Assembly (NCBI RefSeq): GCF_006345805.1
Contig: NC_043015.1
Location: forward strand, 50,902,001 to 50,966,000
Source of the DNA: Octopus sinensis
Taxonomy: Eukaryota
Reading direction: 5' to 3'
Length of the DNA: 64,000 nt
Both the position numbers and the translations under genes were made by a program. Position 1 is the stretch's first letter. The number at the start of each line of letters is the position of its first letter. Below are positions 18,413 through 59,369 of this stretch, piece after piece. The notes beneath the pieces are model-generated. The model was given only the letters and a program-made list of their open reading frames with translations. It was not told the origin of the DNA and searched no databases.

Positions 18413-18447
<35 letters not shown>

Positions 18448-18456
18448 TGATAGATA

Positions 18457-19482: not shown

Positions 19483-19498
19483 AGATAGATAGCTAGCT

Positions 19499-19574
<76 letters not shown>

Positions 19575-31655: not shown

Positions 31656-31803
31656 ACTTTTTTCTTGTCGTTCTTGTTCTTGTAGATAGAGTTCCCTCAT
31701 TTTGTTCACTTTCTTGACCGCTCGTTTGGACCGACGCTTCGTTTTATTGCCCTTTATTTCAGGACATTTCATGAGTCGTTCCAACGGATATGAAATTGAT
31801 GAT
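31656..31803 (-). CDS. CXorf58: CXorf58-like protein, coding exon
   Basis: ctgactgcAG|A...AAA-AGT|GTaaat. (K)SSISYPLERLMKCPEIKGNKTKRRSKRAVKKVNKMRELYLQEQERQEKS. RRSK.A..KV.KMR..Y matches the recalled human GRRSKQAQMKVEKMRKVY. 148 nt. Confidence 0.82.
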
Positions 31804-32904
31804 CTGCAGTCAGAAGTAATTGAAACGGATGCTGTAATATTTGCGGGAAAAAAAAACTAAATAAGGAACCATTCAACATCAACATCATCATTACCACCAC
31901 CACCACCACCATCATCATTATTATCATCATCATGCTCATCACTATCATCGTTGTCATCTTCCTCCTCCTACTCCTCACTATCACTGTCCTACCACCACCA
32001 GCACCTACTACCACCACCTATCACCACCACCACCACCACCTATCACCACCACCTACCACCACCACCACCACAACCTATCACCACCACCACTATCACCACC
32101 ACACCACCACCACCACCACCTATCACCACCACCACCTATCACCACCACCACCACCACCTATCACCACCACCACCATCACTATCACCACCACCACCACTAT
32201 CACCATTTAATGTCCATTTCCCATGCTGGCATGGATTGGATGGTTCAACATGATGGGCTAGCGGGGTGCGTCAAGCCTCTATCATCTACTTTGGTTATGC
32301 TCTCTACAGCTGGATGCCCTTCTTAATGCCAACCATTCCAACCCCTATCCTGTCTTCTAAAATGCAAATAAGAACACAAATAACAACTACAATAAAAATG
32401 CTACCACCACCACCACCACCACCACCACCAATAACAACAGCAACGGCAGCAACAAATCACATATCAGTCACTGAGGGAGCTTCAACATGGTTGTCTGACC
32501 TGCTAGAAATAACCACCAAATCTCCTTCAAATCACTCTTTACTGACTTGTCTTAAATAACAAAAAAGACACATTGGAGAAGATAGTCATGGATACTTCAA
32601 CTGGCTTGAGGTGGTCATGGTTGGCATGTCTTTAATCAAAGACTTAAATTGATTAAAGCTGATCTGGAGCTCAACAACAATAACAACAGCAACAATATCA
32701 AGACTTTATACCACAGAGCTTCCTAAAAATAGACACCAATATCTAAGCACTGTCCAAGCCTGATTAGGTTGCTTATGGAGAAAACCAAGCAAACCAAAGC
32801 AAATAATTGACCTCCACAAACTATAAATTCACAAACACATTCTACTTTACAAGAATGAAGGACAACTCAGAGTAACAAGACTAAAACAAGAGAACTCAGA
32901 GACG

Positions 32905-33648
32905 AAACATCCCTGGAAGTTTCATCCAAATCCATCCAGTGGTTCTTGTGATATCGTGTCCATGGACAAACAAACATAGCTGAAAACAATACCTCCACCT
33001 TTGTTAAAGCGGTGGAAACATCATCATCATCATCATTGTTCGACTGTGGTCGAGACAATGGAATTTATCATGCTACGCCAGACTTCACGGTCCATCATGG
33101 CATTACGGAGGTCCTGTTGCTGGACGCCTGTATCCCTGGAGATTACATCAGGGTAGGAGAGTGTGCGCCCTCTGGTATTGCGAGTAGATGGCTTCCAGAG
33201 GAGAAGAGTAGAAATTACCTCTTTTTCAGCTCTACAACAATGTCCAGCAAACTGGACTCTCCTACCTTTTACAAGGTGGAAACAAGAGCACTCAGGGAGT
33301 TCAAACTTCCGCCAAGGCAACACCAACTTCTTCTCAATGATTAGCCTGAGATGATTTTTAAAATGAGAATATCTGAAATAAACTCGACTGCTCTCACAAA
33401 CGAGAATACTAAAAATGAACCTGACCGCTCTCAAAAATTAAGTAAAAGAACAGGAAAAATAATTCAGAATCCTTGTCTGGTAACAGATCGATCCCAAAAT
33501 CTAATCAGTTCATGCCATTCACGAGGCCAAATATCCCTGAAAGTTTCTTCTGAATCCATCCAACAGTTATTGAGATATCTTGTCCATGGACAAACAAACA
33601 AACACGACTGAAAACAATACCTCTGCCTTTGCTAAGGCAGAGGTAAAA
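32905..33648 (+). mobile_element. Helentron-associated (HINE/DINE-1-like) modules with 3' hairpins
   Basis: Two related modules (32905-33018, 33532-33648), each with ACAAACAAAC and a terminal stem-loop. The second is the perfect TACCTCTGCCTT-tgct-AAGGCAGAGGTA (33618-33645). Confidence 0.5.
33020..33345 (-). mobile_element. RTE-group LINE 3' fragment (second family)
   Basis: RRVQFAGHCCR...LLLWKP...RGRTLSYPDVISRDTG...AMMDREVWR* with a (GAT)n tail. Confidence 0.78.
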
Positions 33649-34192
33649 AAGATAAAGACCACCCCTTCGGTTATGAATGTCTATGAGATTGCACCTAGAA
33701 AGTTCCCTCTGAGACACAAGTCTGGGTAAAGTTGTTTCTGGGAGACCAGCAGTCACCCATGCATACCAGCCTCCCCTTCTCCACACCACTGATGTTATCC
33801 AAGGGAAAGGCAAAGGCTGATACAGCTTGGCACCAGTGATGTCATAACTTATTTCTACAGCTGAGTGAACTGGAGCAACATGAAATAAAGTGTCTTGCTC
33901 AAGAACACAACACACAACCTGATCTGGGAATTGAACGCACTACCTCATGATTGTGATCCTGACACCCTAACCATTGAGTCATACACCTTCACAGAATAAC
34001 AAGAATAAGATATAAGAAATATATGCATAATATAAGAGTATTCTCATCATCAGCTATCCAAGCAGGTATCATTACGGTTTCGACACATGAGCAGAACCAT
34101 TCAATCTGGCAGAGTCTACAGCATTAAAAATATCATTCGCAGAAGAGAAACACAGGTAAAAATTTTTATGGTAACGTTTTTGAAACTCTTAC

Positions 34193-34346
34193 TTCAAAGC
34201 TGAGATGATATTAAGGTGTAACATTTGGATTTTGGGATTAACTGGTTTCACCAGAAGATTTGTGAGATGGTGTTGGATATCCGGAGAAACTTTGCCACTG
34301 TACAAAAACTCAACAATATCGTAGAAGATGATATGGCGTGGAACGT
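34193..34346 (-). CDS. CXorf58: CXorf58-like protein, coding exon
   Basis: aatgtAG|AC...TTG-AA|GTaaga. (D)VPRHIIFYDIVEFLYSGKVSPDIQHHLTNLLVKPVNPKIQMLHLNIISAL(K), similar to the recalled human NIPRTMLMYDIVHY.ESG. 154 nt. Confidence 0.88.
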
Positions 34347-34590
34347 CTACATTAAAAAGAAAAGAAAAATTATTTCAATTACAGAGTGGAAAATACATAT
34401 TGGCCATGGGAAAACAAAGAAAGACTGTTAACTTCATATAGCATTTAAACCAACCATAACCAGCACAAATATTCTACCTGTTTTATGCTGAAATTGGAAA
34501 GATCTGGTCTCTCACACCTTCTCTGCAATGTCATACTAAATATAAACAATGACATCATTGAAATTTCAAATCTAGAAGATGATTGCATGG

Positions 34591-34809
34591 TCAACCCTTT
34601 GGCATTTAAACTGGACATATCTGACCCAAATATTCTTGTTTTATGCTTAAACCAGCCAAATCTGGCCTCTCACACCTACCCTACAATGTCATTCTAAAAA
34701 TAAACAACCAGACTTTGCATAAACAACAAAACTATGCATAATTAATTTAAAATAGTGTGAATAAATAAGCATTACATCTGACTGAAAAATCTGAGTAGTA
34801 AAGAATTAA
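34591..34809. mobile_element. piggyBac-type MITE
   Basis: TCAA|CCCTTTGGCATT...AGTAAAGAA|TTAA degenerate ends. A second copy at about 42030-42334 ends AATGCTAAAGGG|TTAA, and a partial copy lies at 34435-34590. Confidence 0.55.
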
Positions 34810-35474
34810 TTCAAAACAATGTGAAATAAATAAATATTATAGGTATAGGAGTGGCTGTGTGGTAAGTAGCTTGCTTATGAACCACATAGTTCCGGGTTCA
34901 GTCCCACTTCGTGGCACCTTGGGAAAGTGTCTTCTACTATAGCCTCGGGCTGACCAAAGTCTTGTGAGTGGATTTGGTAGAAGGAAACTGAAAGAAGCCC
35001 GTCGTATATATGTATATGTGTGTATATGTTTGCATGTCTGTGTTTGTTCCCCCACCATCGCTTAACAATCGATACTGGTGTGTTTACGTCCCCTCACTTA
35101 GTGGTTCGGCAAAAGCGACCGATAGTATAAGTACTAGGCTTACAAAGAATAAGTCCTGGGGTCGACTTGCTCGACTAAAGGCAGTGCTGCAGCATGGCCG
35201 CAGTCAAATGACAGAAATAAGTAAAAGAATAAAAAAATATATATATATATGTATATATACATGTGTGTTCTACATGGCTATCACATCTATTCTACAGTAT
35301 ATTTGCTTCTGTTTAACACAAAATTTCCCATCAAATCATTTGTTGAACAACTTTATCTCCAAGCAAAATGAGAAAGAAAGACAGAAAGAAAGGGAAAAAA
35401 AAATCAATATTTTCTTAAATGCATATCAAGGAATAAATCTAATTTTCTCCCTGAAATAAACTAAATTCCGGTAC

Positions 35475-35550
35475 CATTTAGAGAAAGAAGTCTCCAGTAG
35501 TTACATTTGCCACCATATTTAGCAGGAGTTTCATCGATATGGGCCAGGTA
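35475..35550 (-). CDS. CXorf58: CXorf58-like protein, coding exon
   Basis: ctatttcAG|TAC...AAT-G|GTaccg. YLAHIDETPAKYGGKCNYWRLLSLN, similar to human FDEAPAFSGGRNNSWRKL. 76 nt. Confidence 0.9.
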
Positions 35551-36123
35551 CTGAAATAGAAAGACAAAGATTGAATTATAAACTGTTATATTAGAGATTC
35601 GTGGAGGCACAATGGCCCAGTGGTTAGGGCAGCGGACTCGCGGTCGTAGCATCGTGGTTTCGATTCCCAGACCGGGCATTGTGAGTGTTTATTGAGCGAA
35701 AACACCTAAAGCTCCACGAGGCTCTGGCAGGGGGTGGTGGTGAACCCTATTGTACTCTTCCACCACAACTTTTTCTCACTCTTTCTTCCTGTTTCTGTTG
35801 TATGTGTATTTCAAAGGGCCAGCCATGTCACACTCTGTGTCATGCTGAATCTCCCCAAGAACTACGTTAAGGGTACACGAGTCAGTGGAGCGCTCAGCCA
35901 CATGCACGTTAATTTCATGAGCAGGCTGTTCCGTTGATTGGATCAACTGGAATCCTCGTCATCGTAATCGATGAAGTGCCATTGTCAATAAAATAAAATA
36001 AAATAAAGATGAATTTTTAAAATTCTTGCACAGCCTGGTACAGGTCCACAGCTCCATGGTCAGAGATCCCTGTTCCGAGGAGAGGATTGTGAACTGATAT
36101 TATGGCTTCCACTTTAGTGCCAT

Positions 36124-36534
36124 AAGATCTTTTTGGTTTGAATGGCAGTTTTTTCTAGCGGTGTCATATGAAATTGTCACCCATAATTATGACCTTAGTA
36201 TCGATCTATTGCATTTCAATCTATTTCAGGGTTAGGAGTGGAGGGAAAGATATCTTTTTTTCTTCAGAAATGTGAATAAACCCAATCTGTTTCTTAAACG
36301 AGGGACATATTCATATGGCACAGAATGTTTTCACCTCAATAGACGTCATTGATTGGTTGAAATTGCAGAAACTGAAGAAAAAAACAACATATATCTTACA
36401 AACTATAGAATTTTCTCAATAAAGCCAAGAGAAAAAGATGTTTTATAAACACATTCTACCAGTATACCAAGTTTAAAAGTGTTTAGTTACATGGAAATTA
36501 TTTTAAAAAACTGCCGGTCAAACCAAACAGATCC
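36124..36534. mobile_element. MITE with about 30-bp TIRs (copy 1)
   Basis: AGATCTTTTTGGTTTGAATGGCAGTTTTTT ... AAAAAACTGCCGGTCAAACCAAACAGATCC. It is the inverted homologue of 51349-51765. Confidence 0.75.
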
Positions 36535-36617
36535 GCGCCATGTTATGTTTAGTTTTTTTTGTTGGTGATAATCACAAAGTTGTTAGGAGGGAAACAAGGG
36601 AACAACTCCATTCTTAC

Positions 36618-36749
36618 CTGCATGTAATCCTTCAGCGTCACAACGTCAACAAAATCTGTTGTTTTCCTGCAGTGATGTTGCACTTGGTCATACAGGAGTT
36701 GATCAAAGAATAATCGAGGGCCCTTTATTTTAAGGCTGTCTTCATTTGC
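36618..36749 (-). CDS. CXorf58: CXorf58-like protein, coding exon
   Basis: tatttacAG|GCA...ATG-CAG|GTaaga. ANEDSLKIKGPRLFFDQLLYDQVQHHCRKTTDFVDVVTLKDYMQ, similar to human TDIMDVVTMQDYVQ. 132 nt. Confidence 0.9.
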
Positions 36750-38313
36750 CTGTAAATACAATGTTTCATTTACTACTACTACTACTACTACTACTACTAA
36801 TAATAATAATAATAATCCTTTCTACTAAAGGCACAAGGCCTGAAATTTTGGCGGGAGGAGACTAGTCAATTATATCAATCCCAGTGTTTCACTGGTCCTT
36901 AATTTATCGACCCCGAAAGGATGAAAGGCAAAGTAGACCTCAGTGGAATTTGAACTCAAAATGTAGTGACAGGCAAAGTATTGCTAAGAATTATGTCCAG
37001 CGTGGTAACAATTCTGCTAGCTCGCCACCTTGATAATGATGATGATGATGATAATGATAATAATAATAATAATAATCCTTTCTTCTATAGGGCACAAGGC
37101 CTGAAATTCTGGGAGAGGGGGCTAGTCGGTTACATTAACCCCAGTATTCAACCGGTACTTATTTTAACAACCCCAAAAGAATGACAGGCAGAGTTGACCC
37201 CAGCAGCATTTGAACTTAGAATGTAACGGAGGATGGAATGCTGCTAAGCATTTTACTTGATGTGCTGATGATTCTGCTAGGTCGTCAATAATAATAACTA
37301 GCACTAGTGCATGCTTATACAGCTGCGTGCGTGCGCACATACACGCGAGTACTGTCCAAATCTCTGACCAATCACACACAGCTAGCTGGCATTCAATTGG
37401 TGTATCAAGTTTCAGGCATTATGATTGAGTTTTGGACAGAAAATTCACAAAGTCACTTCTATTGATTTTTTAATGGCTTTGCGGGGTGATTGGGGAAATG
37501 TAAAGATGTGCACAACCACCCTTGGACGGTTTTGAATGACCACAGAAAGTGTGAGCCCTCTAACTGAAAAATTGTGGATTTGTATAAAGGACGCACACAC
37601 AGACATTTTGCCGTTTATATATATAGAGGTAATAATAATAATTTCTTTTATATATCAAAGGAGCATAGATGAGGGTGGGGGTAGGGTATCTCACAAGTAC
37701 AGAAAATAATTTGTGATGCATCTCACTACTTCTGGTCCCTCATCATCTGATTCTCACAACAAAAGAAAAAAAACAAAAACAAAAGAAATCTAGCCATCTT
37801 TGTTGTTGTTTGTGTCATGGAACTTTTGGAATGGTTGTTACAACCGGATGCCATTCTCATTATGAACCATTCTATAGTGTGGACTGGACACATTTTATCA
37901 GATTGGAATGACTACAAAGGCCATTATCATTGCATCAAGGATGACTTCTGAGATTCCTATAGACAAAAGCTTCTTAACAATTCTTAAACGAGATCACAAT
38001 AGAATGGTTTTCAAGTGTCTTCTCCAGACTCTTCAGAAGACAATTAAACACCATAAACTAATTGATATTCATTAATTATAAGGTAGCGAGCTGGCAGAAT
38101 TGCTAGTATATTGGGAACACTGTTCAGCAGTATTTCATCTGCCATTACATTCTGAGTTCAAATTCCACTGAGGTCAACTTTGCCTTTCATCATTTCGGGG
38201 TCGATAAAATAAGTACCAGTTACGCACTGGGGGTCGATGTAAGTGGCTCACCTGCTCCCCGCAAATTTGAACCAATTATTGAGTGCTTCTACTGATTACA
38301 GTAGTAAGCTTAA

Positions 38314-38440
38314 CCTTTAGCACACTGTAGGTGGATCATGTTACCATATGAGTTTTCTCCCCTGTGGTAACTCTATATGAGTTCACTTGCCTGTAGTGGC
38401 AGGGGAAACAACTCTAGAGAAAATGCGGTGTGCTAAAGGT
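38314..38440. mobile_element. 127-bp piggyBac-type MITE
   Basis: TTAA|CCTTTAGCACAC ... GTGTGCTAAAGG|TTAA: perfect 12-bp TIR with TTAA target duplication. Confidence 0.8.
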
Positions 38441-38655
38441 TAACTGAACCTATGCTACCTGTTTACAGCTAGCAAAAAGAGTTAAGTATTTAGACAAGGG
38501 CCTGAAACTGAGGTCAGTGGCGCTGGACAAAATACGAACTAGTAAGCTTTGAGTTACAATCAAACTGGTCATTGGTGCATGACATGACTTCAAAGAAGAA
38601 ATAGAAACAAATGAAAAGTTACAATGTTTTTTCTTCATATTTCATTTTATTTTAC

Positions 38656-38770
38656 CTCAGTTGCTGCTGGAGTCATCATTGTTTTCCCACTGAGATATTT
38701 GATAACTGGGCCGTTTTGGTGGAGGAAAATCTTGAAATATACCAATGGAGGGAAGGTTCTTCCACCAAAC
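38656..38770 (-). CDS. CXorf58: CXorf58-like protein, coding exon
   Basis: tcatccAG|G...ACT-GAG|GTaaaa. (R)FGGRTFPPLVYFKIFLHQNGPVIKYLSGKTMMTPAATE, similar to human RFRGETFPPFIVFKIFLH..KYFSGK. 115 nt. Confidence 0.92.
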
Positions 38771-39396
38771 CTGGATGAAATTTCAACAAGATTTTTAAGT
38801 TTAATAAACATCACTGATGAGTCATTGGTCAGTTAATAATTATAAAGTATCCTCTGTAGCTAATTAGATCTGTCTAAAGCAGTGGTTCTCACTGGGGGTC
38901 CATATAAGGTTTTGTTGTTAAAATTAATGTGCAGGAGTAGCTGTGTGGTAAGAAGTTTGCTTCCCAACCGCATGGTTCTGGGTTCAGTCCCACCTTGGGC
39001 ATGTTTCTTCTACTATAGCCTTGGGCTGACCAAAGCCTTGTGAGTGGATTTGGTAGACATAAACTGAAAGAAACTGATGTATGTCATTTTTGTATCCTCT
39101 CCATTTTCTTATTAGCCGTATGAATTAAGGGTAAACCACTTTCTACCCTTGCCCATATATAACATTCAATTGTGAGATTGCCACACAATAACCAGCACTT
39201 GGGTACGAATAATTGGGTACAATACCAGCAGTATATTGGATAGGTACTATCCTTTAGTTAGTTTCTCAACCTCTAACTCACACAGAAATATATATATATA
39301 TATATATATATATTGGTAAAAACGGTAAGATAACAAAAGAAAGGAAGAGACCTCAATATTATGTAAATAGAGGAAATTTATCTATAAAATAATATG

Positions 39397-39552
39397 TTAC
39401 AATTACTCAATAGTCAAGATAAAACTTTGAGTTTCAGATGCCGAAGTGGAAATCCACAACACCATCTCTTCATAACCGAAGAGATGGTGTTGTGGATTTC
39501 CACTTCGGCATCTGAAACTCAGAGTTTTATCTTGACTATTGAATAATTGTAA
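39397..39552. repeat. near-perfect palindrome, 75-bp arms, 6-nt loop
   Basis: 39397-39471 vs 39478-39552, 2 mismatches, loop ATAACC. Confidence 0.92.
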
Positions 39553-39556
39553 TATG

Positions 39557-39591
<35 letters not shown>

Positions 39592-39594
<3 letters not shown>

Positions 39595-39977
39595 GGTGAT
39601 TCAAAAGTTGCCATACATAGGAACAATTTATCTTTTTTATAAGAAACAGCTTATAAGAACAACTTTTTTTATTTATTAAACAGGCTCTATTCTATATGGT
39701 TACCATTGTTTTGAATACACATTGCAATACGTTTACCCGACTCATTGTGAACTCGTAATAGCACATCTAGTGATGATATGTGGGCAAATGAGGTGGTGAT
39801 GCATTCCTTCAAATGATTTATGTCTTTTATCTTTCTGTGATAACCCTAACCCTAACTTTCAAATGCTCCCAAAGATAGAAATCAAGAGGGTCAGATCAGG
39901 GAATCTAGTGGGGATCTTATAAACTCTTTCTTATAAAAACATAAAGTTTTCCTATGCATGGAGACTTGAATCACCCT

Positions 39978-39978
<1 letters not shown>
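39592..39978 (-). mobile_element. internally deleted Tc1/mariner element
   Basis: TIRs CAGGGTGATTCAA...TTGAATCACCCTG within (TA)n. Minus-strand transposase remnants PLDFYLWEHLK and CIQNNGNHIE*. Confidence 0.8.
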
Positions 39979-40011
<33 letters not shown>

Positions 40012-40089
40012 ACAATTTAATAAATAAAATATATGCATACATACATACATATATATATGTACGTACCTACATCTATATGTATATATACA

Positions 40090-40135
<46 letters not shown>

Positions 40136-42532
40136 AGTACAGGACACCACAAATAAACGTAGAACACGAGAAACGAAAACATAAAAACAAACTAGGAAAT
40201 GGACTTTTTTTTTTCTTAACAATGAAAAAACAGAGTACAAGACAAACATATATATATATGTCTATATACACACACACCAGAGTAAGCACATAGATGTGAA
40301 ACAAGGTGGAAAAAAATAGTACTCGAATACCAGAAGTAGAGTAATATGCTTTATCAAAAAGCAGCAAAAATATCACAAAAACTGTTACACAGAGTTTCCT
40401 GTTCCCATTCGTCAGACAGTTTTGGTTAGAAAAACAAAACTGTCTGACAAACGGGAATATGAAACTCTGAGTAACAGATTTTGTGATATTTTTCCGGCTT
40501 TTAAATAAAGTATATATATGTGAGTGTGTGTGTGTGTATGTATGTATGTTCGTCCACCCACCATCGCTTGACAACCGATGTTGGTGTGTTTACATCCCCA
40601 TAACTTAGTTGTTCAGCTAAAGAGACCGACAGAATAAGTACTAGGCTTACAAGGAATAAGTTCTGGGGTCAATTTGTTTGACTAAATCCCTTTAAGGCAG
40701 TTGCTCCAGCATGGCCACAGTCAAATGGCCGAAACAAGCAAAAGAGTAAAGGAGAATAAATTGCTTATATTTTCTACACAAAATATTATTTTTTTTATAC
40801 AATTTCTAATAATATTCAATTATAAAAAATAGTGTAGGGTTTATCTTATATACATCCTGTGCTGGCGACACATAAAAGGCACCTGTGCCAGTGATATGAA
40901 AAAGACACCCAGTACACATGGTCGAGTGGTGGGCATCTGGAAGGGCATCCAGCCATAGAATGGCATGCTAAAAGAGACTGATGCCTGGTGCAGCCCTCTG
41001 GCTTATCAGCTCCAGTCAAATCGTCCAACCCATGCCAGCAAGGAAAATGGATGTTAAATGATGATGATGATGATGATATTGAAAGGCTATGGAGGTCCAG
41101 CAGAGTAAAACAGGAATCAGAAAAGATTCCGTAGGCAAAAAATGGTTAAAGAACCACTGCTTTAGAGGCTGCATGGAAAACTTCTGGTTAGTCAGAAGGG
41201 TAAGGGTGATGCTAAAGGGCTTTTTGCTAGGGCCACCAAGACCAATGGGAAAAGGAGAGGAATATCTTCTGTTTTTTCTACCTTGTCTGAATTCTTGCAA
41301 CAAACTGGACACAGGTAATGGCACCAGGTAGCAGATTAAGCTAAGGAATGATTTAGTCTACCAACCTACACATTCTAGCATCATGATTCATCGGAAAATA
41401 GTTTGGAATGGTTTTGCATTGCCTTCTCCTAGCCTAGGGAAGGATATGAGTTGAAAAGGAGACATTAATTATAAACTCTCTGATATGCAGATGACAGAAG
41501 TCAAAGTTTATCATCATTTTTAGCCAGCTGTCTGATAATCTAAGACCAAGACTGATGGCTTCTGCAGTGAAAATGGCAAAGAGCTGTCCAAGAAAAGATT
41601 TGGATGATACATCAACAGATCAAGTATTTATGTACATCATCGTCATCGTTTAAAATCCGTTTTCCATGCTGGCATGAGTTGGGTGGTTTGACTGAGGACT
41701 GGCAAGCCAGGAGGCTGCACCAGGCTCCAATCTGGGAATTGTTCATGATGGTCATGAATATTATCATAATGGTGTCTGGCATGAGGGCACATGGCTTAGT
41801 GGTTAAGGTGTTTGGCTCAAGATTGTAAGGACGTGCGTTTGATTCCTGGTGGTGCATTGTAACCTTGAGCAAGACACTTTATTTCCCGGTGCTCCAGTTC
41901 ACACAGCTGGCACAAATGATCTGTACCTGTAATTCAAAGGGGTCAGTCTTGTCACATAAAGGAGCTTTGAAATGCATGTTATGAGATTATCACACAGATG
42001 GCATTAAGTGAAGCAATAGGGTGATACCCAAGCTTTCAACTACAAGTGAACATCTGGCCAAAACATTCTGCTGTCTGTTTTATGTTCAAACAGACTAGAT
42101 CTGGTGTCTCACACCTACCCTACAATGTCATTCTAATGAAACAAAACTCCGTTGCTGGGATACTCAAACTTTCCAGGTGACTGAATGGATCACGGGTTGT
42201 CTAATGTCTTTCTAAAAGTAAACAATTAGATCATCAAAAACTTGAAGTTATATGATAATGTATGATTAATTCAAAACAATGTGAATAAATAAGCATTACA
42301 TTTAGACAGAATAATCTGAATGCTAAAGGGTTAAAATATGCCTGATGATGATGGATTTTTTGCCATGATGTGATCTATGAATGCATCAATAAAATGTTCC
42401 TGAAATGGGTGTAGTGAATTTTGAACCCCACTCGTGATTTTCTTTTGTACATATGCTGAACTTGGACATAGCCCGGGGATGTATCTACAATTTATATCGG
42501 ACTGGGTAACTACGTTTATATGCATCTGTCTA

Positions 42533-42544
<12 letters not shown>

Positions 42545-42580
<36 letters not shown>

Positions 42581-43582
42581 AGTTATGAGAGGTATGGTGT
42601 GAAGAAGACCCAAAGGTGTCAGGTAATGCTGAGTAAGTGCTATGGATAGACCATAGTTAAGCTCCAGGTTCGGTGTTTATGTGAATGAGGAGCCCAACAT
42701 AGGTCATGTGTATATATAAAAATTAACAGAATGAGATAAAAATCCAAGGCTGTGAAAGATTTTAGAACATTTATAAATATATGGTCTTACAGCTGTTTCT
42801 GGGATATTTTATATATCCTTTCATTGAATATTCCTTTCTTTTCCCATTGGTCTTGGTGGCCCTAGCAAAAAGCCATTTGGCATTACTCTTACCCTTCTGA
42901 CTAGTCTTCCATCTATAGCTAGATGTGTGAGTGTATATATATACATACAGCATACAACCAACAAACAACAACTTTAAGTTGCTCCAGTACCTGGCCTATA
43001 TTTGGTACCCATCGAACCAAGTGAAATCATAGTCTGATGCCAGTGTCGTAAAACTGGTACTGATGTTAGCGGCGTGTACAAAGCATCCATTACACTCTCA
43101 AAGTGGTCGGCATTAAGAAAGGCATCCAGCCATAGAAACCATGCTGAATTAGACTGGAAGTTGGTGCAGCTCTTTGGCTTACCAGTTCCAGTAGTTAAAC
43201 TATCTAATCCATGCCAGCATGGAAAGCAGATGCTAAGTGATGACAATGATGATGATGATAACGACTGTTTTTGTTATTATTATTATCATTATTGTTTTTA
43301 CGTATTTTTGTATTCTTATTCGTGTAACATCGTCCATTTTTCATCATTGTTTTGTATATATTCGAGGCTTTCTTCCAAGGAATCTAATGCTCTTGGCTTA
43401 GATTTTCCTTGGGGCTGGTCAGATCGGAGCAATCTCAAGATTAATCAGCCGAAATTGCGAGGATGATCCGGTTCTTGACTGAAGATTGAAGGCTTCGAAT
43501 GTCCCGTCCGTGTTTTTTGTATCGTCTTCTAATGTTTTGTGTTCTTGTCCCAGATTGTATTTTTTTACATATACATACATAC

Positions 43583-43639
<57 letters not shown>

Positions 43640-44643
43640 AGTTATGAGAGGTATGGTGTGAAGAAGACCCAAAGGTGTCAGGTAATGCTGAGTAAGTGCT
43701 ATGGATAGACCATAGTTAAGCTCCAGGTTCGGTGTTTATGTGAATGAGGAGCCCAACATAGGTCATGTGTATATATAAAAATTAACAGAATGAGATAAAA
43801 ATCCAAGGCTGTGAAAGATTTTAGAACATTTATAAATATATGGTCTTACAGCTGTTTCTGGGATATTTTATATATCCTTTCATTGAATATTCCTTTCTTT
43901 TCCCATTGGTCTTGGTGGCCCTAGCAAAAAGCCATTTGGCATTACTCTTACCCTTCTGACTAGTCTTCCATCTATAGCTAGATGTGTGAGTGTATATATA
44001 TACATACAGCATACAACCAACAAACAACAACTTTAAGTTGCTCCAGTACCTGGCCTATATTTGGTACCCATCGAACCAAGTGAAATCATAGTCTGATGCC
44101 AGTGTCGTAAAACTGGTACTGATGTTAGCGGCGTGTACAAAGCATCCATTACACTCTCAAAGTGGTCGGCATTAAGAAAGGCATCCAGCCATAGAAACCA
44201 TGCTGAATTAGACTGGAAGTTGGTGCAGCTCTTTGGCTTACCAGTTCCAGTAGTTAAACTATCTAATCCATGCCAGCATGGAAAGCAGATGCTAAGTGAT
44301 GACAATGATGATGATGATAACGACTGTTTTTGTTATTATTATTATCATTATTGTTTTTACGTATTTTTGTATTCTTATTCGTGTAACATCGTCCATTTTT
44401 CCATCATTGTTTTGTATATATTCGAGGCTTTCTTCCAAGGAATCTAATGCTCTTGGCTTAGATTTTCCTTGGGGCTGGTCAGATCGGAGCAATCTCAAGA
44501 TTAATCAGCCGAAATTGCGAGGATGATCCGGTTCTTGACTGAAGATTGAAGGCTTCGAATGTCCCGTCCGTGTTTTTTGTATCGTCTTCTAAATGTTTTG
44601 TGTTCTTGTCCCAGATTGTATTTTTTTACATATACATACATAC

Positions 44644-44692
<49 letters not shown>
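42545..44692 (+). repeat. tandem duplication of a 1.06-kb unit bounded by (AT)n
   Basis: Identical ORFs 1059 nt apart (42771/43830, 42974/44033). By eye only two 1-nt indels differ outside the microsatellites. Confidence 0.93.
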
Positions 44693-44696
<4 letters not shown>

Positions 44697-45456
44697 GCCT
44701 CACTGAGGAAATGACCAGCGACCGAGACCTTTGGAAATATTCTGTACGTGAGAAGACCAGGCAGGACAAGTGAGCACAGCCCACTTATGAATGCCTTTCC
44801 TCCCTTGGACACAAAGACCTGTTGAGGCAAGCGAAGTCGATATAGAACCTCATCCGACGACAGGCACCCATGCCAACCCCCTTTGCTTGCGAAGACATGT
44901 TGGGGCAAGCGAAATCGAATTGAACCAGCCAGGATCCCTGGTCTGGTGGTACGTAAAAAGCACTATCCGACTCGTGGCCTATGCCAGCGCTGCCTTCACT
45001 GGCTTCCGTGCCGGTGGCACGTAAAATACACCAATCTGACCGTACGACAGGCACCCATGCCAACCCCCTTGCTTGCGAAGACATGTTGGGGCAAGCGAAA
45101 TCGAAATCGAATTGAACCAGCCAGGATCCCTGGTCTGGTGGTACGTAAAAAGCACTATCCGACTCGTGGCCGATGCCAGCTCCGCCTCGTCTGGCTTCCG
45201 TGCCGGTGGCACATAAAATACACCAATCCGACCGTGGCCGTTGCCAGCCTCGCCTGGCACCTGTGCAGGTGGCACGTAAAAAGCACCCACTACACTCACG
45301 GAGTGGTTGGCGTTAGGAAGGGCATCCAGCTGTAGAAACACTGCCAGATAAGACTGGAGCCTGGTGCAGCCTTCTGGCTTCCCAGATCCCCGGTCGAACC
45401 GTCCAACCCATGCTAGCATGGAGAACGGACGTTAAACGATGATGATGATGATGATG
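44693..45456 (+). mobile_element. RTE LINE 3' fragment with an internal tandem duplication of about 190 bp
   Basis: LGLTEEMTSDRDLWKYSVREKTRQDK*, duplicated GACAGGCACCCATGCCAACCCC...GACTCGTGGCC module, (GAT)n tail. Confidence 0.82.
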
Positions 45457-45664
45457 AGTCTACTCTGCTGAGTGGTCGGTGTTAGGAAGGGCATCCGGCT
45501 GTAAAAATCCTGCCAAAACAGTTACAGAAGTCTGGTGCAGCCTTCTGCCTGGCTGGCTCCTGTCAAACTGTCCCACCAATCCTAGCATGGAAGACAGATG
45601 TTAAATAATGATGATGATGATACATATATGTATGTATGTATGTATGCTTGAATGTATGTATTAC

Positions 45665-45759
45665 CTCAGTCGAACATAGGCTGACATTGTTGGATCCTGG
45701 AGTAATTCAGCTTCATGTGGTGAGATGGTCTGAAGAAAAACACTTGTGATACACTGTTC
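45665..45759 (-). CDS. CXorf58: CXorf58-like protein, coding exon
   Basis: ttttgtAG|GAA...CTG-AG|GTaata. EQCITSVFLQTISPHEAELLQDPTMSAYVRL(R), similar to human VAPLEAKLIKDPTMQCKIRF. 95 nt. Confidence 0.92.
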
Positions 45760-47526: not shown

Positions 47527-47619
47527 AGCAGCGCAAACGGCATGTTTCAAAAGCTTAAATATCTTCCGGTCCCTGTTGGATAACCAGGCTCTTTCAATCG
47601 TTTGAACTGCTTCTCTCAT
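47527..47619 (-). CDS. CXorf58: CXorf58-like protein, coding exon with IQ-like motif
   Basis: T-run...gcaacAG|ATG...GCT-GCT|GTatgt. MREAVQTIERAWLSNRDRKIFKLLKHAVCAA, similar to human AQIIQRAWLS..KMIFRLLKHAICAA. The eight exons total 1092 nt, i.e. 363 aa plus stop. Confidence 0.92.
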
Positions 47620-50587: not shown

Positions 50588-51058
50588 CATCAATAGTAAT
50601 AATAATAACAATAATGATAACAATAATAATAATAACGATAATAATAATGATGATAATGATGGTGATAATAATAACAATAATAATAATAATGATAATAATA
50701 ACAATAATAATAATAATGATAATAATAACAATAATAATAATAATGATAATAATAATGATGGTGATAATGTTAATAATAATAATGATGATGATAATGATAA
50801 TGATGATGATGATGATGATGATAATGTTAATAATAATAATGATAATGATGATGATGATGATGATGATAATGATGATGATGATAATGATGATGATGATGAT
50901 GATGATAATGTTAATAATAATAATGATAATGATGATGATGATAATGATGATGATAATAATAATAATAAAAAAATCTCACATACTCGTCTTTCCGCCATTG
51001 TGTTTTATTGAAAAAACTTTCTCATAAATTGTTCTGAAAGTCCATTTTTATATTTTAC

Positions 51059-53566: not shown

Positions 53567-53637
<71 letters not shown>

Positions 53638-53760
53638 ATATACACACACACATATATAATTATACATACATAAATAGTTGAATATTAAATTAAATGATCG
53701 TTTCATATCTTTTAGGGTAGAGGACTATCTTTATTAATTTTTACAAGGAAACCATTAACA

Positions 53761-53837
53761 GTGACTTCGAAGTTTCAGTTTACCAGCTCTCTCTATACAG
53801 TCCGAGGACAGCTAGTAAGCAGAATCTTCGAAGTCAC
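53761..53837. ncRNA. candidate pre-miRNA-like hairpin
   Basis: Perfect 12-bp base (GTGACTTCGAAG/CTTCGAAGTCAC) plus about 20 further positions with 4 mismatches. No known miRNA recognised. Confidence 0.3.
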
Positions 53838-54287
53838 AATCAACCTTTACTTTGTAAATTTCTCTCTCTTCCTTTCCTTTCTTCTAATCTTATGGCAAAT
53901 ACCACGTCCAAAAGGACGGTGATCAACTAAGATTTCTTAGAAACTGAAAATATTTAACGGTTTAGCAAACACAAGAAAAAAAGAAAAAAAAAGGAAGAAT
54001 AAAAAGACCGTATAGTGTCGAACTTATCCAATACAGGGAATCGAAAAACTCGAGTCAATTAAAAACTATCTATGTAATTAGTAGAAAAACACACCCCTTA
54101 AGTTAACACTGAGATGGTGTGTTTAGTCTGCTACTAATTGCGTGGATATTCTTAGTTGATTAAATTTCCCCACTTCCTATATTGAATATGTGAGGCCGTA
54201 CTGTATGTTTATTCAGTAAACAGAAGGCTACCCAGGGGCATCTTCTTTCCCACTCAGTCCTAAATTGTTGATTAAAAATAAGAAACG

Positions 54288-54317
54288 ACTTACTCAATCC
54301 GAAAAGTGTGCGCAGCT
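54288..54317 (-). other. candidate non-coding first-exon 3' end and donor of the CXorf58-like gene
   Basis: Minus-strand GGATTGA|GTAAGT perfect donor (54293-54288), 24 nt from the X-box. No ATG nearby. Confidence 0.45.
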
Positions 54318-54331
54318 GTCTCTATAGCAAC
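54318..54331. promoter_or_regulatory. RFX X-box in a putative bidirectional promoter (CXorf58-like / IFT80)
   Basis: GTCTCT-AT-AGCAAC fits the X-box consensus GTYNCY-AT-RGNAAC. It sits in a locally CpG-containing unique stretch between two divergent genes, one a core IFT gene. Confidence 0.8.
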
Positions 54332-55914
54332 GGAAGGCTAAAAACACAGACCGGGCTCGGCGGAAAGAAATAACTTTGAACTTAAAAAAACAAAAAGATC
54401 AGAATTTCGTAAATTTATCTTATTTTACTGTTTGCTAAAACTTACAATTTTTTTTAGAATAAATCTAAATTTAATAATAAAGAATGATATTGTTTTATAC
54501 TAAATAAAATTAGTTACGTGAGTTTAAACAAATACCTTAACATCGAAATGATTGATACAAAGTCGAAGAGTTGAAGATTTATCAAGCTCAGAATGTGTCT
54601 ATAAAGTGTTGTGGTTTCAATTTTCATTAAAAGCTACGGCCTCTTATCATTATTATGAAACAATTTCAATGAAATGATTATAATAATCAGACAGCAACGG
54701 ACGTCCTATCCGGTTTTCAGAAACCCGGAGTATTGTGCAAAATCCTACATTATGCATTATGCCTAGAGTAGAAAAGAATATATTGTGCATTATAGGGCGG
54801 TGATCTAGAAGGAACGTTAGCACGCCGGGCGACATGCGTAGCCGTATTTCGTCTGCGGTTACGTTCTGAGTTCAAATTCCACCGAGGTCGACTTTGCCTT
54901 TCATCCTTTCGGGGTCGATTAAATAAGTATCAGTTACGCACTGGGGTCGATATAATCGACTTAATCCGTTTGTCTGTCCTTGTTTGTCCTCTCTGTGTTT
55001 AGCCCCTTGTAGGCAATAAAGAAATAGGCATTTCGTCTGCCGTTACGTTCTGAGTTCAAATTTCGCTGAGGTCGACTTTGCCTTTCATCCTTTCAGGGTC
55101 GATAAATTAAGTACCAGTTACGAACTGGGGTCGATGTAATCGACTTAATCCGTTTGTCTGTCCTTGTTTGTCCCCTCTATGTTTAGCCCTTTGTGGGTAG
55201 TAAAAAGTAGGTATTTCGTCTGCCGTTACGTCCTTGTTTGTCCCCTCTGTGTTTAGCCCCCTGTGAGCAATAAAGGAATAAATATATTACTGAGTCGAAA
55301 GACCCTGATTTTGAAACTAGTTAATTTACTTACGGTGTGTTAAAAATACTGTTATTCTTCCATTTTTTAAAAAGTGGATCGATAAATATTAAACATAGGG
55401 GAAGAATTCACACAAAAAAAAAAAACAACAACAAAAGACGAAGACAGGTGGTATAGACAACAAACAGATGTATTAGCTTAACGCTGGGGAAGTGAAAAAG
55501 TCTTTAACGTTTCGAACCTACGCTCTTCCACAGAAAGGAACACAGAAAGAAACAAGGAGAGAAAATAAAGAATGTGTAGTGGTTTCACTTCCCGAGCGTT
55601 AAACTAATACATCTGCTTTTTTGTTTTGTTTCGTTTTTTTTTGTGAATTCTCCCCATATATTACACGCTCACGTGGTCGCACCAATTGATCCTGTCTTCT
55701 TTCATCACCCAAAGAACTTTTACGGTTTTTCTACCTGGACTTTCTACTATCGTACACTTCAGCTGCACCCCTCCTGCCCATGGATTACACTGGACTCCTC
55801 TGCCGATGAAATATTAAACATACTCTGCTTTTCAAGTGTATTAATTTGTACTTGAATATCAGTCAGATAAAATCGTGTTCTTTACTTTTCCTTATTTAAT
55901 TTTCGTCCTATAAA

Positions 55915-56858
55915 CATTATGCTGTATACATATGGCACAGTTTGAGACATTCTAAGTGGATTAACTAGATCTTTGGTAATGAATTAATTTGCACGGACTG
56001 ACCTAAGAGGGACCTGAGGGGTATGTACGCCACTCAGGAAAAGAAGTGTGTCCTTCTAAATATTATGCCTTTTCTCCTGGAATTGTATTCCCTGCTGACA
56101 TTGTGGGCAAGACTTCCACCCCCCACCCAAACCACCCTTAAAATAATTTTTTTTTTTTTAGAAACAAACCCCACTTTTCGGCTACGGGGAATACGAATCT
56201 GCAAAAATTGGCAAAAATCGGCATTTTAAAATTACCACCCTCCACCCCCATTTCCTTCATTTTTACTTTTCTCAGAATTTTTTTTTTTTTCAAAATATGC
56301 GGAAAAATACAGAGATCATGATTCTGAAAAAATTTCCCAAAATGTTTGTAAAATTTTTTTTAAGAATTTTTTTTTATAAATATGCGGGAAAATACGGACA
56401 TTATGATTCGGACAAAAATTTTAAAACATTTCTGTACTTACGGTTAGGGTTAGGGTTAGGGTGTTAGGGTTACTGTTGGGGAAAAAGTCAAAATTGTAGA
56501 ATTGGTGGGGTAAGGGGCCTGAAATTTAACAATGCCGATTTTTGGCAATTTTCGGGAACCTCCGTATCCGAAAACAGAGGTTTTTGGCAAAAAAAAAAAA
56601 TTAAATAGACAAATTTGGGAGAAAATGGTGGTGGTGGTGGTGGTAGGGGGGGACGGGCAGAAGTCTTTCCCATTATGCTGTATAGATATGGTACAGTTTG
56701 AGACATTTTAAGAATTTTAAGTGGATTAATAAATATCAACTAGACAATGATTAGTAAAGAATTAATTTGCACGGGCTGACCCAAGGGGGACCTGAGGGGC
56801 ACGTGCCCCACGCAAGAAAAGAAGTGCGTCCTTCTAAATAACGTTATTATGCCCTTTT
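55915..56858. mobile_element. complex repeat with terminal direct repeats, internal inverted repeats and TTAGGG hexamers
   Basis: Direct repeat 55915-56073 / 56671-56858, inverted repeat about 56160-56232 / 56520-56590, (TTAGGG)3 at 56444-56461. Confidence 0.55.
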
Positions 56859-57256
56859 TCGCTGACCTTGTGCCTTCACTTCGAAAAATACCTGGGACCA
56901 CGCCTGATTTGAAACTGTTAAGTTCTTTACTTTTCATTGTTCATTTTACATTTCAATTATGTATTTACACAGTCTCCGGAGAACTGGAAAATCCAAAAAT
57001 CCGGAACACTTCCGGCCCCAAGTTTACTGGATAATTAGTCCAGTACTGTAATAAAAATAATTAAAGATATGATTCGTTTCCATTTTATGATTTCTAGTTT
57101 TGTAAATGCTCATTTCCGCGCATGCACAACAGGATATCTTATAAAGTTGTCATGGAGTTGTAGGCTGGTAACTGTAAACAATTACTATTATTGTCTGATA
57201 ACTTTACACGTTCTCCTTGACTTGGCTGTTTATTTTTGGTGGCATATTTCAGGAAG

Positions 57257-57293
57257 ATGAGACTCAAGATTTCATTACAAAAAGAACCGAAAC
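57257..57293 (+). CDS. IFT80: IFT80 first coding exon
   Basis: tttcAG|GAAG-ATG. MRLKISLQKEPK(H) vs recalled human MRLKISLLKEPKH. Ends C|ATATCCTTT. Confidence 0.95.
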
Positions 57294-59147: not shown

Positions 59148-59369
59148 ATAGTGAACTTGTCAGCTGCGTCTGTTGGACATCTCCCGAAGAAGTTTATTCA
59201 GCAGCCGATGACCATCAAATTCTAAAATGGAACTTAAACCTAAATGAAAGCAGCAAATTTGTGACGTTACCCGATGGTGTCTACCCTACCAGTCTTTTGT
59301 GGACCCCTAAAGACGCCGGGAGTGGGAAGAAAGTTGGTTCTGATACATTTGTTCTTACATCAACTGATG
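59148..59369 (+). CDS. IFT80: IFT80 second coding exon (WD40 region); the gene continues beyond the window
   Basis: (H)SELVSCVCWTSPEEVYSAADDHQILKWNL...LPDGVYPTSLLWTPK...DTFVLTSTD(G)|GTaaat vs human [30 protein letters not shown]...FVLTSSDG. Confidence 0.96.

What the first reader, a model, noticed from the sequence alone, without database searches (positions are those of the whole stretch)
54288..54331. Single perfect X-box serving a divergent IFT80 / CXorf58-like pair
GTCTCTATAGCAAC matches the RFX X-box consensus. A perfect minus-strand donor lies 24 nt to the left, and IFT80's ATG exon (with only 4 nt of UTR after its acceptor) needs an upstream non-coding exon, plausibly starting just right of the box. 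X-boxes are quasi-palindromic and can act in both directions, which implies shared RFX control and supports a ciliary role for the unknown gene.
Basis: partly seen in the sequence, partly recalled or inferred. Interest (0 to 1): 0.78.

Follow-up and report, generated by a model that had tools for sequence, protein, structure and literature searches.

The report
Octopus IFT80/CXorf58 intergenic X-box
A 14-base RFX-type "X-box", identical to a validated nematode one, lies between two divergent octopus genes, IFT80 and a CXorf58 homologue, that sit head-to-head from molluscs to amphioxus; it is a plausible ciliary control element, but IFT80 seems to have its own promoter elsewhere.

Summary
The motif GTCTCTATAGCAAC is at 54318-54331, and a minus-strand GTAAGT donor lies 24 nt to its left. 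The window is Octopus sinensis.

For the X-box:
- It is the best hit in 64 kb to a matrix built from 29 validated C. elegans X-boxes.
- It is letter-for-letter the validated X-box of C. elegans Y110A7A.20.
- It is unchanged in O. vulgaris and O. bimaculoides, inside the best-conserved 70 bp of the spacer.

Against "perfect" and "single":
- Its left half is weak by fly and mammalian rules.
- About 0.4 equally good sites are expected per 64 kb.
- A second X-box-like site sits 98 bp upstream of the IFT80 ATG.

Genes:
- Both identities are confirmed.
- IFT80 and CXorf58 are head-to-head in octopus, scallop, limpet, Lingula and amphioxus.
- I found no paper that mentions this pairing.

- IFT80 has a conserved proximal promoter-like block, including a GCGCATGC palindrome, so the proposed upstream non-coding exon is unlikely.
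- In O. sinensis, 2.4 kb of repeats separates the box from IFT80; in O. bimaculoides the gap is 512 bp.

No transcript data were available, so transcription starts and RFX binding are untested.

The parts
54318..54331 (.). X-box X1, GTCTCT AT AGCAAC (GTTGCTATAGAGAC in the CXorf58 direction)
   Evidence: Unique in the window. Top hit of the C. elegans X-box matrix. Identical to the validated X-box of C. elegans Y110A7A.20. Identical in O. vulgaris L001 3542, O. sinensis L002 6668 and O. bimaculoides L003 7389.
54279..54347 (.). Most conserved core of the spacer, covering the donor and the X-box
   Evidence: At least 97% identity in 60-bp windows between O. sinensis and O. bimaculoides. This is in the top 4.5% of all aligned windows, a level otherwise reached mostly (5 of the 7 other such stretches) at or beside exons.
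53619..54586 (.). Non-repetitive block conserved among the three Octopus species
   Evidence: 86% identity to O. bimaculoides L003 7140-8068. Only 8% of it recurs elsewhere in the window.
54288..54293 (-). Minus-strand splice-donor hexamer GTAAGT (the exon would end at 54294)
   Evidence: Read directly. Invariant in three species. Whether it is used is inferred, not shown.
54294..54360 (-). Candidate non-coding first exon of the CXorf58-like gene; it contains the X-box and its 5' end is unknown
   Evidence: Inference only: it has no ATG, it ends at a conserved donor, and candidate acceptors lie upstream of the MAERR exon at 51167 and 51034.
54587..56979 (.). Repeat-rich segment present in O. 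sinensis and O. vulgaris but absent from O. bimaculoides; it separates X1 from the IFT80 proximal block
   Evidence: In O. bimaculoides the colinear blocks abut at L003 7140/7141. 63% of the segment recurs elsewhere in the window.
57118..57125 (.). GCGCATGC palindrome (NRF1/P3A2/EWG type by my knowledge), 132 bp upstream of the IFT80 ATG
   Evidence: The only copy in the 64 kb. Found at 125 bp in O. bimaculoides (full GCGCATGCGC), 93 bp in Lottia and 76 bp in Pecten upstream of the IFT80 ATG.
57140..57146 (+). TATA-like TATAAAG in the IFT80 proximal block
   Evidence: Read directly. Invariant in three Octopus species. Function is inferred.
57146..57159 (.). X-box-like site X2, GTTGTCATGGAGTT (AACTCC AT GACAAC on the other strand), 98 bp upstream of the IFT80 ATG
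   Evidence: 11.9 bits. It ranks 8th in the window list and 2nd in the 35-kb O. bimaculoides locus. It is one base from the validated tub-1 X-box ATCTCCATGACAAC, and its first 10 bases equal the che-2 X-box. Invariant in three species.
57257..57293 (+). IFT80 first coding exon (MRLKISLQKEPK + 1 nt)
   Evidence: ORF listing and sequence. The same exon is found in five other taxa.
59148..59369 (+). IFT80 second coding exon
   Evidence: The peptide hits IFT80 homologues.
50984..50998 (-). First coding exon of the CXorf58-like gene (MAERR; donor GTATGT at 50983); its 5' boundary is unknown
   Evidence: The O. sinensis RefSeq protein P0159 starts MAERR|MREAV and the O. bimaculoides protein starts MEERQ. 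Sequence shown.
47527..47619 (-). Second coding exon of the CXorf58-like gene (MREAVQTIERAW...)
   Evidence: Acceptor cag|ATG and donor GTATGT. P0159 maps to it.
29583..45759 (-). Remaining CXorf58-like coding exons: 45759-45664, 38772-38656, about 36749-36618, 35550-35476, 34344-34192, 31805-31656 and 29861-29583
   Evidence: tblastn of P0159 against the window: two exons at 100% and the rest at 88-98% over alignments that run slightly past the exon ends.

Best explanation
The 14-mer is a real RFX-type X-box inside an old two-way ciliary promoter region between IFT80 and a CXorf58 homologue. It lies on the CXorf58 side, 24 nt upstream of a conserved splice donor. I infer that it sits in or at the start of a non-coding first exon of CXorf58 and makes that gene respond to RFX.

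IFT80 has its own core promoter directly upstream of its ATG exon. That promoter holds a GCGCATGC palindrome, a TATA-like box and a weaker X-box-like site at -98.

In the compact state kept by O. bimaculoides the two blocks are about 400 bp apart, and X1 is 512 bp from the IFT80 ATG, close enough to act on both genes. In O. sinensis and O. vulgaris, 2.4 kb of repeats has been inserted between them.

Shown: the motif, its conservation in three octopuses, its identity with a validated nematode site, both gene identities, and the deep conservation of the gene pair.

Inferred: RFX binding, use of the donor, the transcription start positions, and action on either gene.
For: - The motif is unique in the window and is the top hit of a C. 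elegans X-box matrix.
- The same 14 letters are listed as the validated X-box of Y110A7A.20 at -60. che-2, the IFT80 orthologue, also has a validated X-box.
- Drosophila Oseg5 (the IFT80 homologue) is down 4.4-fold in dRfx mutants.
- The motif is identical in three Octopus species and lies in a 70-bp core of at least 97% identity, in the top 4.5% of windows.
- In the 35-kb O. bimaculoides locus the two best matrix hits, X1 and X2, both fall in the 3.1-kb spacer. That has a chance probability of about 0.008.
- IFT80 and CXorf58 are head-to-head in Octopus, Pecten, Lottia, Lingula and Branchiostoma, with 427 to 1829 bp between ATGs outside Octopus.
- CXorf58 has already been proposed to be a motile-cilia gene (PMC8317215).
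- In human RFX targets, X-boxes cluster within -500 to +500 of the start site, with a permissive range of -2300 to +1400 (PMC5838959).
Against: - No transcript, CAGE, ATAC or binding data could be reached.
- About 0.4 equally good sites are expected per 64 kb.
- By fly-derived scoring the site is weak in its left half and ranks only 9th to 11th.
- The three octopuses are 84-92% identical across aligned non-coding DNA, so conservation of 14 bases proves little.
- No significant X-box was found in the same spacer in Pecten, Lottia, Lingula or amphioxus. My own Fisher combination, by hand, of per-locus ranks gives P of about 0.27.
- In O. sinensis the box is 2926 and 3320 bp from the two ATGs.
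- The annotated CXorf58 start exon at 50998 may have its own start site nearby, which would leave the 54293 donor unused.
Confidence: 0.5

Rival explanations
1. One X-box sits between two start sites: CXorf58 exon 1 runs leftward to the 54293 donor. A non-coding IFT80 exon starts just right of the box and is spliced over about 2.8 kb to the acceptor 4 nt before the IFT80 ATG.
For: - There is an acceptor-like tttcag|GAAG ATG, conserved in three octopuses.
- Conserved plus-strand donors lie right of the box: GTAAAT at 54409 and GTGAGT at 54518.
- The 2.4-kb repeat insertion lies 68 bp beyond the GTGAGT donor, where an intron would tolerate it.
Against: - The block directly upstream of the IFT80 ATG is conserved. 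Its GCGCATGC palindrome sits at a near-constant 76-132 bp from the IFT80 ATG in three mollusc classes. That fits a core promoter, not an intron.
- The sequence just before the ATG in Lingula, Pecten and amphioxus shows no good acceptor.
- A GTRAGT within 200 nt is expected by chance 11% of the time.
Confidence: 0.12
2. The 14-mer is a chance match in a block that is conserved only because the three octopuses are close relatives, or for some unrelated reason. RFX control of IFT80, if present, would run through the proximal site X2 or other sites.
For: - 30% of simulated 64-kb sequences contain a site at least this good.
- The fly-derived matrix ranks it 9th to 11th.
- Background non-coding identity between the species is 84-92%.
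- There is no significant counterpart in other phyla.
- Laurencon et al. found that an X-box upstream of an ATG does not by itself predict RFX dependence.
Against: - The chance of such a site falling in the spacer of a known RFX-target orthologue is about 0.04.
- It sits exactly on the conservation peak of the block.
- It is identical to a validated site.
- X1 and X2 are the two best hits of the O. bimaculoides locus.
Confidence: 0.25
3. The block at 54.3 kb is a distal upstream element, or the promoter of an unannotated transcript. CXorf58 would start close to its MAERR exon at about 51.0-51.2 kb, and the 54293 donor would not belong to it.
For: - Both RefSeq proteins start in the 50998 exon.
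- The 105 bp upstream of that ATG are at least 97% conserved.
- If the exon began at the strong acceptor at 51167, the leader would carry five upstream ATGs (my reading).
Against: - No X-box-like site scoring 5 bits or more lies between 50998 and 52366.
- Sequence directly upstream of 51230 is a SINE.
- A strong pyrimidine-tract acceptor precedes the exon.
- In Lottia and Lingula an acceptor lies 4 and about 22 nt before the CXorf58 ATG, with a GTAAGT or GTAAGA donor just downstream of an X-box-like site (by eye).
Confidence: 0.13

Closest known systems
Validated X-box of C. elegans Y110A7A.20 (ift-20 by my knowledge), listed in Chu et al. 2012, PMC3245922 Table 1
   Same: The 14 bases GTCTCTATAGCAAC are identical, and it lies upstream of a gene for an intraflagellar-transport protein.
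   Different: The nematode site is 60 bp upstream of the ATG of one gene. The octopus site is 2.9 and 3.3 kb from two ATGs (512 bp and 2.6 kb in O. bimaculoides). Binding by an octopus RFX protein is untested.
X-box of C. elegans che-2, the IFT80 orthologue: GTTGTCATGGTGAC at -117, DAF-19 dependent
   Same: It is the same gene family under RFX control. The octopus proximal site X2 (GTTGTCATGGAGTT at -98) shares its first 10 bases and a similar distance from the ATG.
   Different: X2 lacks the AAC end on that strand and scores only 11.9 bits. The element under review, X1, is a different and more distant site.
Drosophila Oseg5 (CG9333, the IFT80 homologue) as a dRFX target, Laurencon et al. 2007, PMC2375033
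   Same: Expression depends on RFX, with a 4.4-fold drop in dRfx mutants.
   Different: No conserved X-box could be defined in flies. In Octopus a conserved candidate exists, but dependence on RFX is unknown.
Head-to-head gene pairs with two-way promoters (start sites under 1 kb apart), e.g. PMC4089025 and PMC2670823
   Same: Orientation is divergent, the arrangement is conserved across species, and both genes are linked to one organelle.
   Different: The ATGs are 6.26 kb apart in O. sinensis because of repeat insertions. The start sites are unknown. Each gene may have its own core promoter.
Human CXorf58 and its paralogue MFI; a motile-cilia role was proposed in PMC8317215
   Same: The octopus protein is 47% identical over 221 residues to a marsupial CXorf58 (E = 7e-73).
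   Different: By my knowledge, human CXorf58 (X chromosome) is not next to IFT80 (chromosome 3); this was not tested here. The octopus protein has a very short N-terminus before the IQ-like stretch.

Membership tests
RFX X-box (cis element) | 14-bp imperfect inverted repeat matching the nematode consensus GTHNYY AT RRNAAC | tested here: met
   Exact match at 54318-54331.
RFX X-box (cis element) | Match to the stricter vertebrate or fly consensus (GTNRCC N0-3 RGYAAC; GYTRYY N1-3 RRHRAC), with two good half-sites | tested here: not met
   There is no match to GTNRCC N0-3 RGYAAC. The left half scores 2.4 bits and the right half 9.1, and the total of 11.6 is below the weakest of 29 fly sites at 13.6. 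The site fits only the loosest RYYNYY N1-3 RRNRAC.
RFX X-box (cis element) | The sequence is known to work as an X-box somewhere | tested here: met
   The identical 14-mer is listed among validated C. elegans X-boxes, for Y110A7A.20 at -60 (PMC3245922 Table 1).
RFX X-box (cis element) | Position close to the start site or ATG of the target (about 60-300 bp before the ATG in the validated C. elegans table; -500 to +500 of the start site in human) | tested here: inconclusive
   Start sites are unknown. The distance to the ATGs is 2926 and 3320 bp in O. sinensis, and 512 and 2599 bp in O. bimaculoides. The site is 24 nt from a candidate first-exon donor.
RFX X-box (cis element) | Conservation in related species beyond the background level | tested here: inconclusive
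   The site is identical in three Octopus species and lies on the local conservation peak, but background identity is 84-92%. No significant counterpart exists in Pecten, Lottia, Lingula or Branchiostoma. More distant cephalopods could not be obtained.
RFX X-box (cis element) | Bound by an RFX protein, with target expression depending on it | not testable with these tools
   No binding or expression data are available.
Two-way (head-to-head) promoter pair | Two adjacent genes transcribed in opposite directions away from a shared spacer | tested here: met
   IFT80 is on the + strand and CXorf58-like on the - strand, with nothing annotated between them in three Octopus assemblies.
Two-way (head-to-head) promoter pair | Start sites less than about 1 kb apart | tested here: inconclusive
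   The ATGs are 6259 bp apart in O. sinensis and 3124 bp in O. bimaculoides. In Lottia, Lingula, Branchiostoma and Pecten they are about 832, 1131, 427 and 1829 bp apart. Start sites are unknown.
Two-way (head-to-head) promoter pair | The arrangement is kept over long evolutionary distance | tested here: met
   The arrangement is present in cephalopods, a bivalve, a gastropod, a brachiopod and a cephalochordate. IFT80 is not the neighbour in Capitella, Trichoplax or a ctenophore.
CXorf58/MFI protein family | Significant full-length similarity to proteins named CXorf58 | tested here: met
   A 101-residue spliced N-terminus gave 592 hits. The named ones among the best are mostly called CXorf58 (primate, marsupial, amphioxus, scallop, Lingula), the rest uncharacterised or hypothetical. 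P0159 against a wallaby CXorf58 gives 47% identity and E = 7e-73. No Pfam family exists for it.
IFT80 | Sequence similarity and the IFT80 domain set | tested here: met
   The exon 2 peptide hits a protein named IFT80 homolog. The full octopus products carry PF23335 Beta-prop_IFT80_2nd and PF23387 TPR_IFT80_172. The MRLK.SLQKEPKH start exon is shared with five other taxa.

The most novel reading that the evidence does not exclude
IFT80 and CXorf58 form a head-to-head gene pair that dates back to the last common ancestor of protostomes and deuterostomes. It is held together because the two genes share a compact ciliary control region, with X-box and GCGCATGC-type elements. This would make the uncharacterised CXorf58 a co-regulated partner of the intraflagellar-transport machinery. 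The octopus X-box would be the CXorf58-side element of that unit, still acting on both genes.
Probability: 0.35. Interest if true: 0.55.

Novelty: new member of a known kind. Interest (0 to 1): 0.4.

Why it matters
RFX control of intraflagellar-transport genes through X-boxes is well established, so one more X-box near an IFT80 gene is expected rather than surprising.

Two things add value:
- The neighbour is CXorf58, a human protein of unknown function for which a motile-cilia role has only been proposed from database mining.
- That neighbour has stayed head-to-head with IFT80 in molluscs, a brachiopod and amphioxus. Such long-kept divergent pairs usually reflect shared regulation.

The pairing therefore gives independent genomic support for a ciliary function of CXorf58. 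It also offers compact spacers of 0.4 to 1.8 kb in which the shared control can be tested directly.

Tried and rejected
- Three word-index protein searches found no cephalopod proteins. The exhaustive HMMER search was needed to reach the octopus CXorf58 entry.
- Pfam gave no family for CXorf58 exons or for the full protein.
- I used a human MFI sequence recalled from memory only as a lead to find exons. Database proteins replaced it afterwards.
- I tried to find the CXorf58 first exon from transcripts:
  - A Logan contig, L007, from a species I could not identify (its coding exons match this gene at 70-87% nucleotide identity), has a 5' leader with no significant similarity to the 54.3-kb block.
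  - A scallop transcript, L013, has only 61 nt of leader, and it may be colinear with the genome.
  - Both attempts were uninformative.
- Two matrices failed to show a significant X-box in the IFT80-CXorf58 spacer of other phyla. The apparent recurrence of 'X-box-like site followed by a GTAAG donor' in Lingula and Lottia was noticed by eye after the fact, so I give it little weight.
- CpG observed/expected is about 1 across the whole 53.9-57.7 kb stretch, so it does not locate a start site.
- Rfam found nothing credible in 53.4-57.4 kb.
- The fold of the core is only mildly stable (z = -2.3), as expected for a palindromic site.

Full report
**The observation.** GTCTCTATAGCAAC occurs once in the window, at 54318-54331. 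The reverse complement of 54288-54293 is GTAAGT. A minus-strand exon would therefore end at 54294, exactly 24 nt from the box. The IFT80 start exon reads ...atatttcag|GAAG ATG, with the ATG at 57257.

**Is the motif more than chance?**
- The nematode consensus GTHNYYATRRNAAC has two hits in 64 kb against 0.64 expected.
- I built a 14-column matrix from 29 validated C. elegans X-boxes (PMC3245922 Table 1), leaving out the identical site. With it the motif is the best hit in the window on either strand, at 16.7 bits. The training median is 18.4, and four training sites score lower.
- Simulated sequences still give 0.43 such sites per 64 kb.
- A half-site matrix from 29 Drosophila sites (PMC2375033 Table 2) gives 11.6 bits. 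The right half AGCAAC is strong at 9.1 and the left half GTCTCT is weak at 2.4. The total is below every training site and ranks 9th to 11th in the window.
- So 'perfect' holds only for the nematode consensus, and the motif alone is not significant.
- The strongest single point for it is that the same 14 letters are listed as the validated X-box of C. elegans Y110A7A.20, 60 bp upstream of its ATG.

**The genes.** The plus-strand gene is IFT80.
- Its exon 2 peptide hits IFT80 homologues.
- The full octopus products carry IFT80-specific Pfam domains.

For the minus-strand gene I spliced three exons into a 101-residue N-terminus.
- An exhaustive HMMER search returned 592 relatives.
- The named relatives among the best hits are mostly called CXorf58, in mammals, amphioxus, scallops and Lingula; the others are uncharacterised or hypothetical.
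- The O. sinensis RefSeq protein is 47% identical over 221 residues to a marsupial CXorf58 (E = 7e-73).
- CXorf58 is a paralogue of MFI and has been proposed, from database mining, to act in motile cilia (PMC8317215).

**Species and related loci.** The window is 100% identical over the 1.4 kb compared to O. sinensis CM016877.1 (L002), and the ATG-to-ATG distance (6259 bp) is the same. I also obtained the orthologous loci of O. vulgaris (L001) and O. bimaculoides (L003).

**A missed exon.**
- The RefSeq proteins begin MAERR|MREAV in O. sinensis and MEERQ in O. bimaculoides.
- MAERR is encoded at window 50998-50984 and followed by GTATGT.
- The 54293 donor therefore cannot simply join the 47619 exon.
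- If the donor is used, it must join an acceptor upstream of MAERR. Candidates are a strong one ending at 51167 and a weaker one at 51034.

**Conservation within Octopus.**
- The 14-mer is identical in all three species.
- It lies in a non-repetitive block (53619-54586) that is 86% identical between O. sinensis and O. bimaculoides.
- Across all aligned blocks, 60-bp windows average 86.5% identity.
- The stretch 54279-54347, which covers the donor and the box, reaches at least 97%. That is in the top 4.5% of windows. Of the seven other stretches at that level, five lie at or beside the IFT80 and CXorf58 exons and two lie inside IFT80 intron 1.
- This suggests constraint, but the species are too close for it to be decisive.

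**A lineage-specific insertion.**
- Window 54587-56979 has no counterpart in O. bimaculoides, where the two flanking blocks abut.
- 63% of this segment is repeated elsewhere in the window.
- In O. bimaculoides the box is therefore only 512 bp from the IFT80 ATG, against 2926 bp in O. sinensis.

**IFT80 has its own proximal promoter-like block.** The sequence 57075-57257 is almost invariant in the three octopuses. It contains three elements:
- the only GCGCATGC in the 64 kb, at 57118-57125 and 132 bp before the ATG; it is a full GCGCATGCGC in O. bimaculoides;
- TATAAAG at 57140-57146;
- GTTGTCATGGAGTT at 57146-57159.

The same 8-mer lies 125, 93 and 76 bp before the IFT80 ATG in O. bimaculoides, Lottia and Pecten. 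It is unique or nearly so in those loci. A palindrome held at a fixed distance from the ATG in three mollusc classes fits a core promoter, not an intron.

The site at 57146-57159 is one base from the validated tub-1 X-box, and its first 10 bases equal the che-2 (IFT80 orthologue) X-box. It scores 11.9 bits. Together with X1 it forms the top two hits of the 35-kb O. bimaculoides locus, both inside the 3.1-kb spacer. The box under review is therefore not the only candidate, and each gene may have its own.

**Deep synteny.** The neighbour lying head-to-head with the CXorf58 homologue is IFT80 in four further taxa. In each the MRLK.SLQKEPKH exon confirms the identity.

| Taxon | Locus | ATG-to-ATG distance |
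|---|---|---|
| Pecten maximus | L004 | 1829 bp |
| Lottia gigantea | L009 | 1431 bp by the model, about 832 bp by my reading |
| Lingula anatina | L005 | 1131 bp |
| Branchiostoma lanceolatum | L006 | 427 bp, using the true start exon |

IFT80 is not the neighbour in Capitella, Trichoplax or the ctenophore Bolinopsis. No paper in the searchable library mentions both genes. This conserved pairing supports shared regulation, and a ciliary role for CXorf58, more strongly than the motif itself does.

**X-boxes in the other spacers.** Neither matrix finds a significant site there.
- Lingula has GTTTTC AGT GGAAAC at the midpoint of its spacer (6th best in 23.8 kb).
- Lottia has GTTTTC ATT AGAAAC (8th best in 23 kb).
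- Pecten and amphioxus have only weak matches.
- My own Fisher combination, by hand, of the per-locus ranks gives P of about 0.27.

**What remains open.** I could reach no transcript, CAGE or chromatin data for octopus.
- Two transcript contigs from other species were uninformative.
- CpG content does not locate a start site.
- Rfam finds nothing in the block.

**Conclusion.**
- The element is a credible RFX site in an ancient IFT80-CXorf58 divergent control region.
- It sits on the CXorf58 side, probably at or within a non-coding first exon.
- IFT80 most likely starts from its own proximal promoter, which carries a second, weaker X-box-like site.

Noticed in passing
window 57294-59147 (+); also L003, L004, L005, L006 and L009: The first coding intron of IFT80 is a U12-type AT-AC intron. 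Its donor is AAAC|ATATCCTTT, its branch site is ACCTTAAC at 59130-59137, and it ends ...CCAAC|AT. The same ATATCCTTT donor, after the same codon, with a TCCTTAAC-like branch site and an AC end, is present in O. bimaculoides, Pecten, Lingula, amphioxus and Lottia.
   Followed up: partly
window 57118-57125; L003 7002-7011; L009 8663-8672; L004 8248-8255: A GCGCATGC palindrome (NRF1/P3A2/EWG type by my knowledge) is unique in the 64 kb. It sits 76-132 bp upstream of the IFT80 ATG in Octopus, Lottia and Pecten, which marks a conserved IFT80 core promoter.
   Followed up: yes
window 57146-57159: A second X-box-like site, GTTGTCATGGAGTT, lies 98 bp upstream of the IFT80 ATG. It is one base from the validated tub-1 X-box and is conserved in three octopuses. 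An RGYAAC half-site follows at 57167-57172 (GGTAAC here, GGCAAC in O. bimaculoides).
   Followed up: partly
window 54587-56979: A 2.4-kb repeat-rich segment is shared by O. sinensis and O. vulgaris but absent from O. bimaculoides. It lies between the X-box block and the IFT80 proximal block and includes SINE copies at about 54790-54963 and 55028-55147.
   Followed up: partly
window 53395-53407, 46791-46803 and 17045-17057: The same X-box-like string, ATTGCT T GACAAC (11 bits with the fly matrix), recurs in repeated (SINE-like) copies, so a repeat family spreads RFX-like half-site pairs through this region.
   Followed up: no
window 52314-52958 (-): A 214-residue open frame (…KDLGILVD…RRSFGMLT…LERVQKLATRMV…) resembles the C-terminal part of a LINE reverse transcriptase. 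It lies in the spacer between the X-box block and the CXorf58 start exon, and part of it is CpG-rich.
   Followed up: no
P0009 (O. vulgaris CAI9737074.1) compared with window 45759-45664 and 38772: The O. vulgaris gene model lacks the seven residues SAYVRLR, lacks the MAERR exon and starts at MQQMREAV. Homologues keep VRLRFGG, so that model looks mis-spliced.
   Followed up: partly
L011 (Bolinopsis) 9081-20999; protein cluster 5: In the ctenophore the CXorf58 homologue is flanked by an AKAP28-domain gene and a radial-spoke (RSPH9-like) gene. One 90% cluster mixes CXorf58 and RSPH9 names and includes a 611-residue Mnemiopsis model, which suggests fused or read-through models of two ciliary neighbours.
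   Followed up: no
L001 35089-36843, L002 40884-41416 and L003 25357-35095: A tubulin-domain gene lies tail-to-tail downstream of CXorf58 in all three Octopus assemblies. Its position in the window was not mapped.
   Followed up: no
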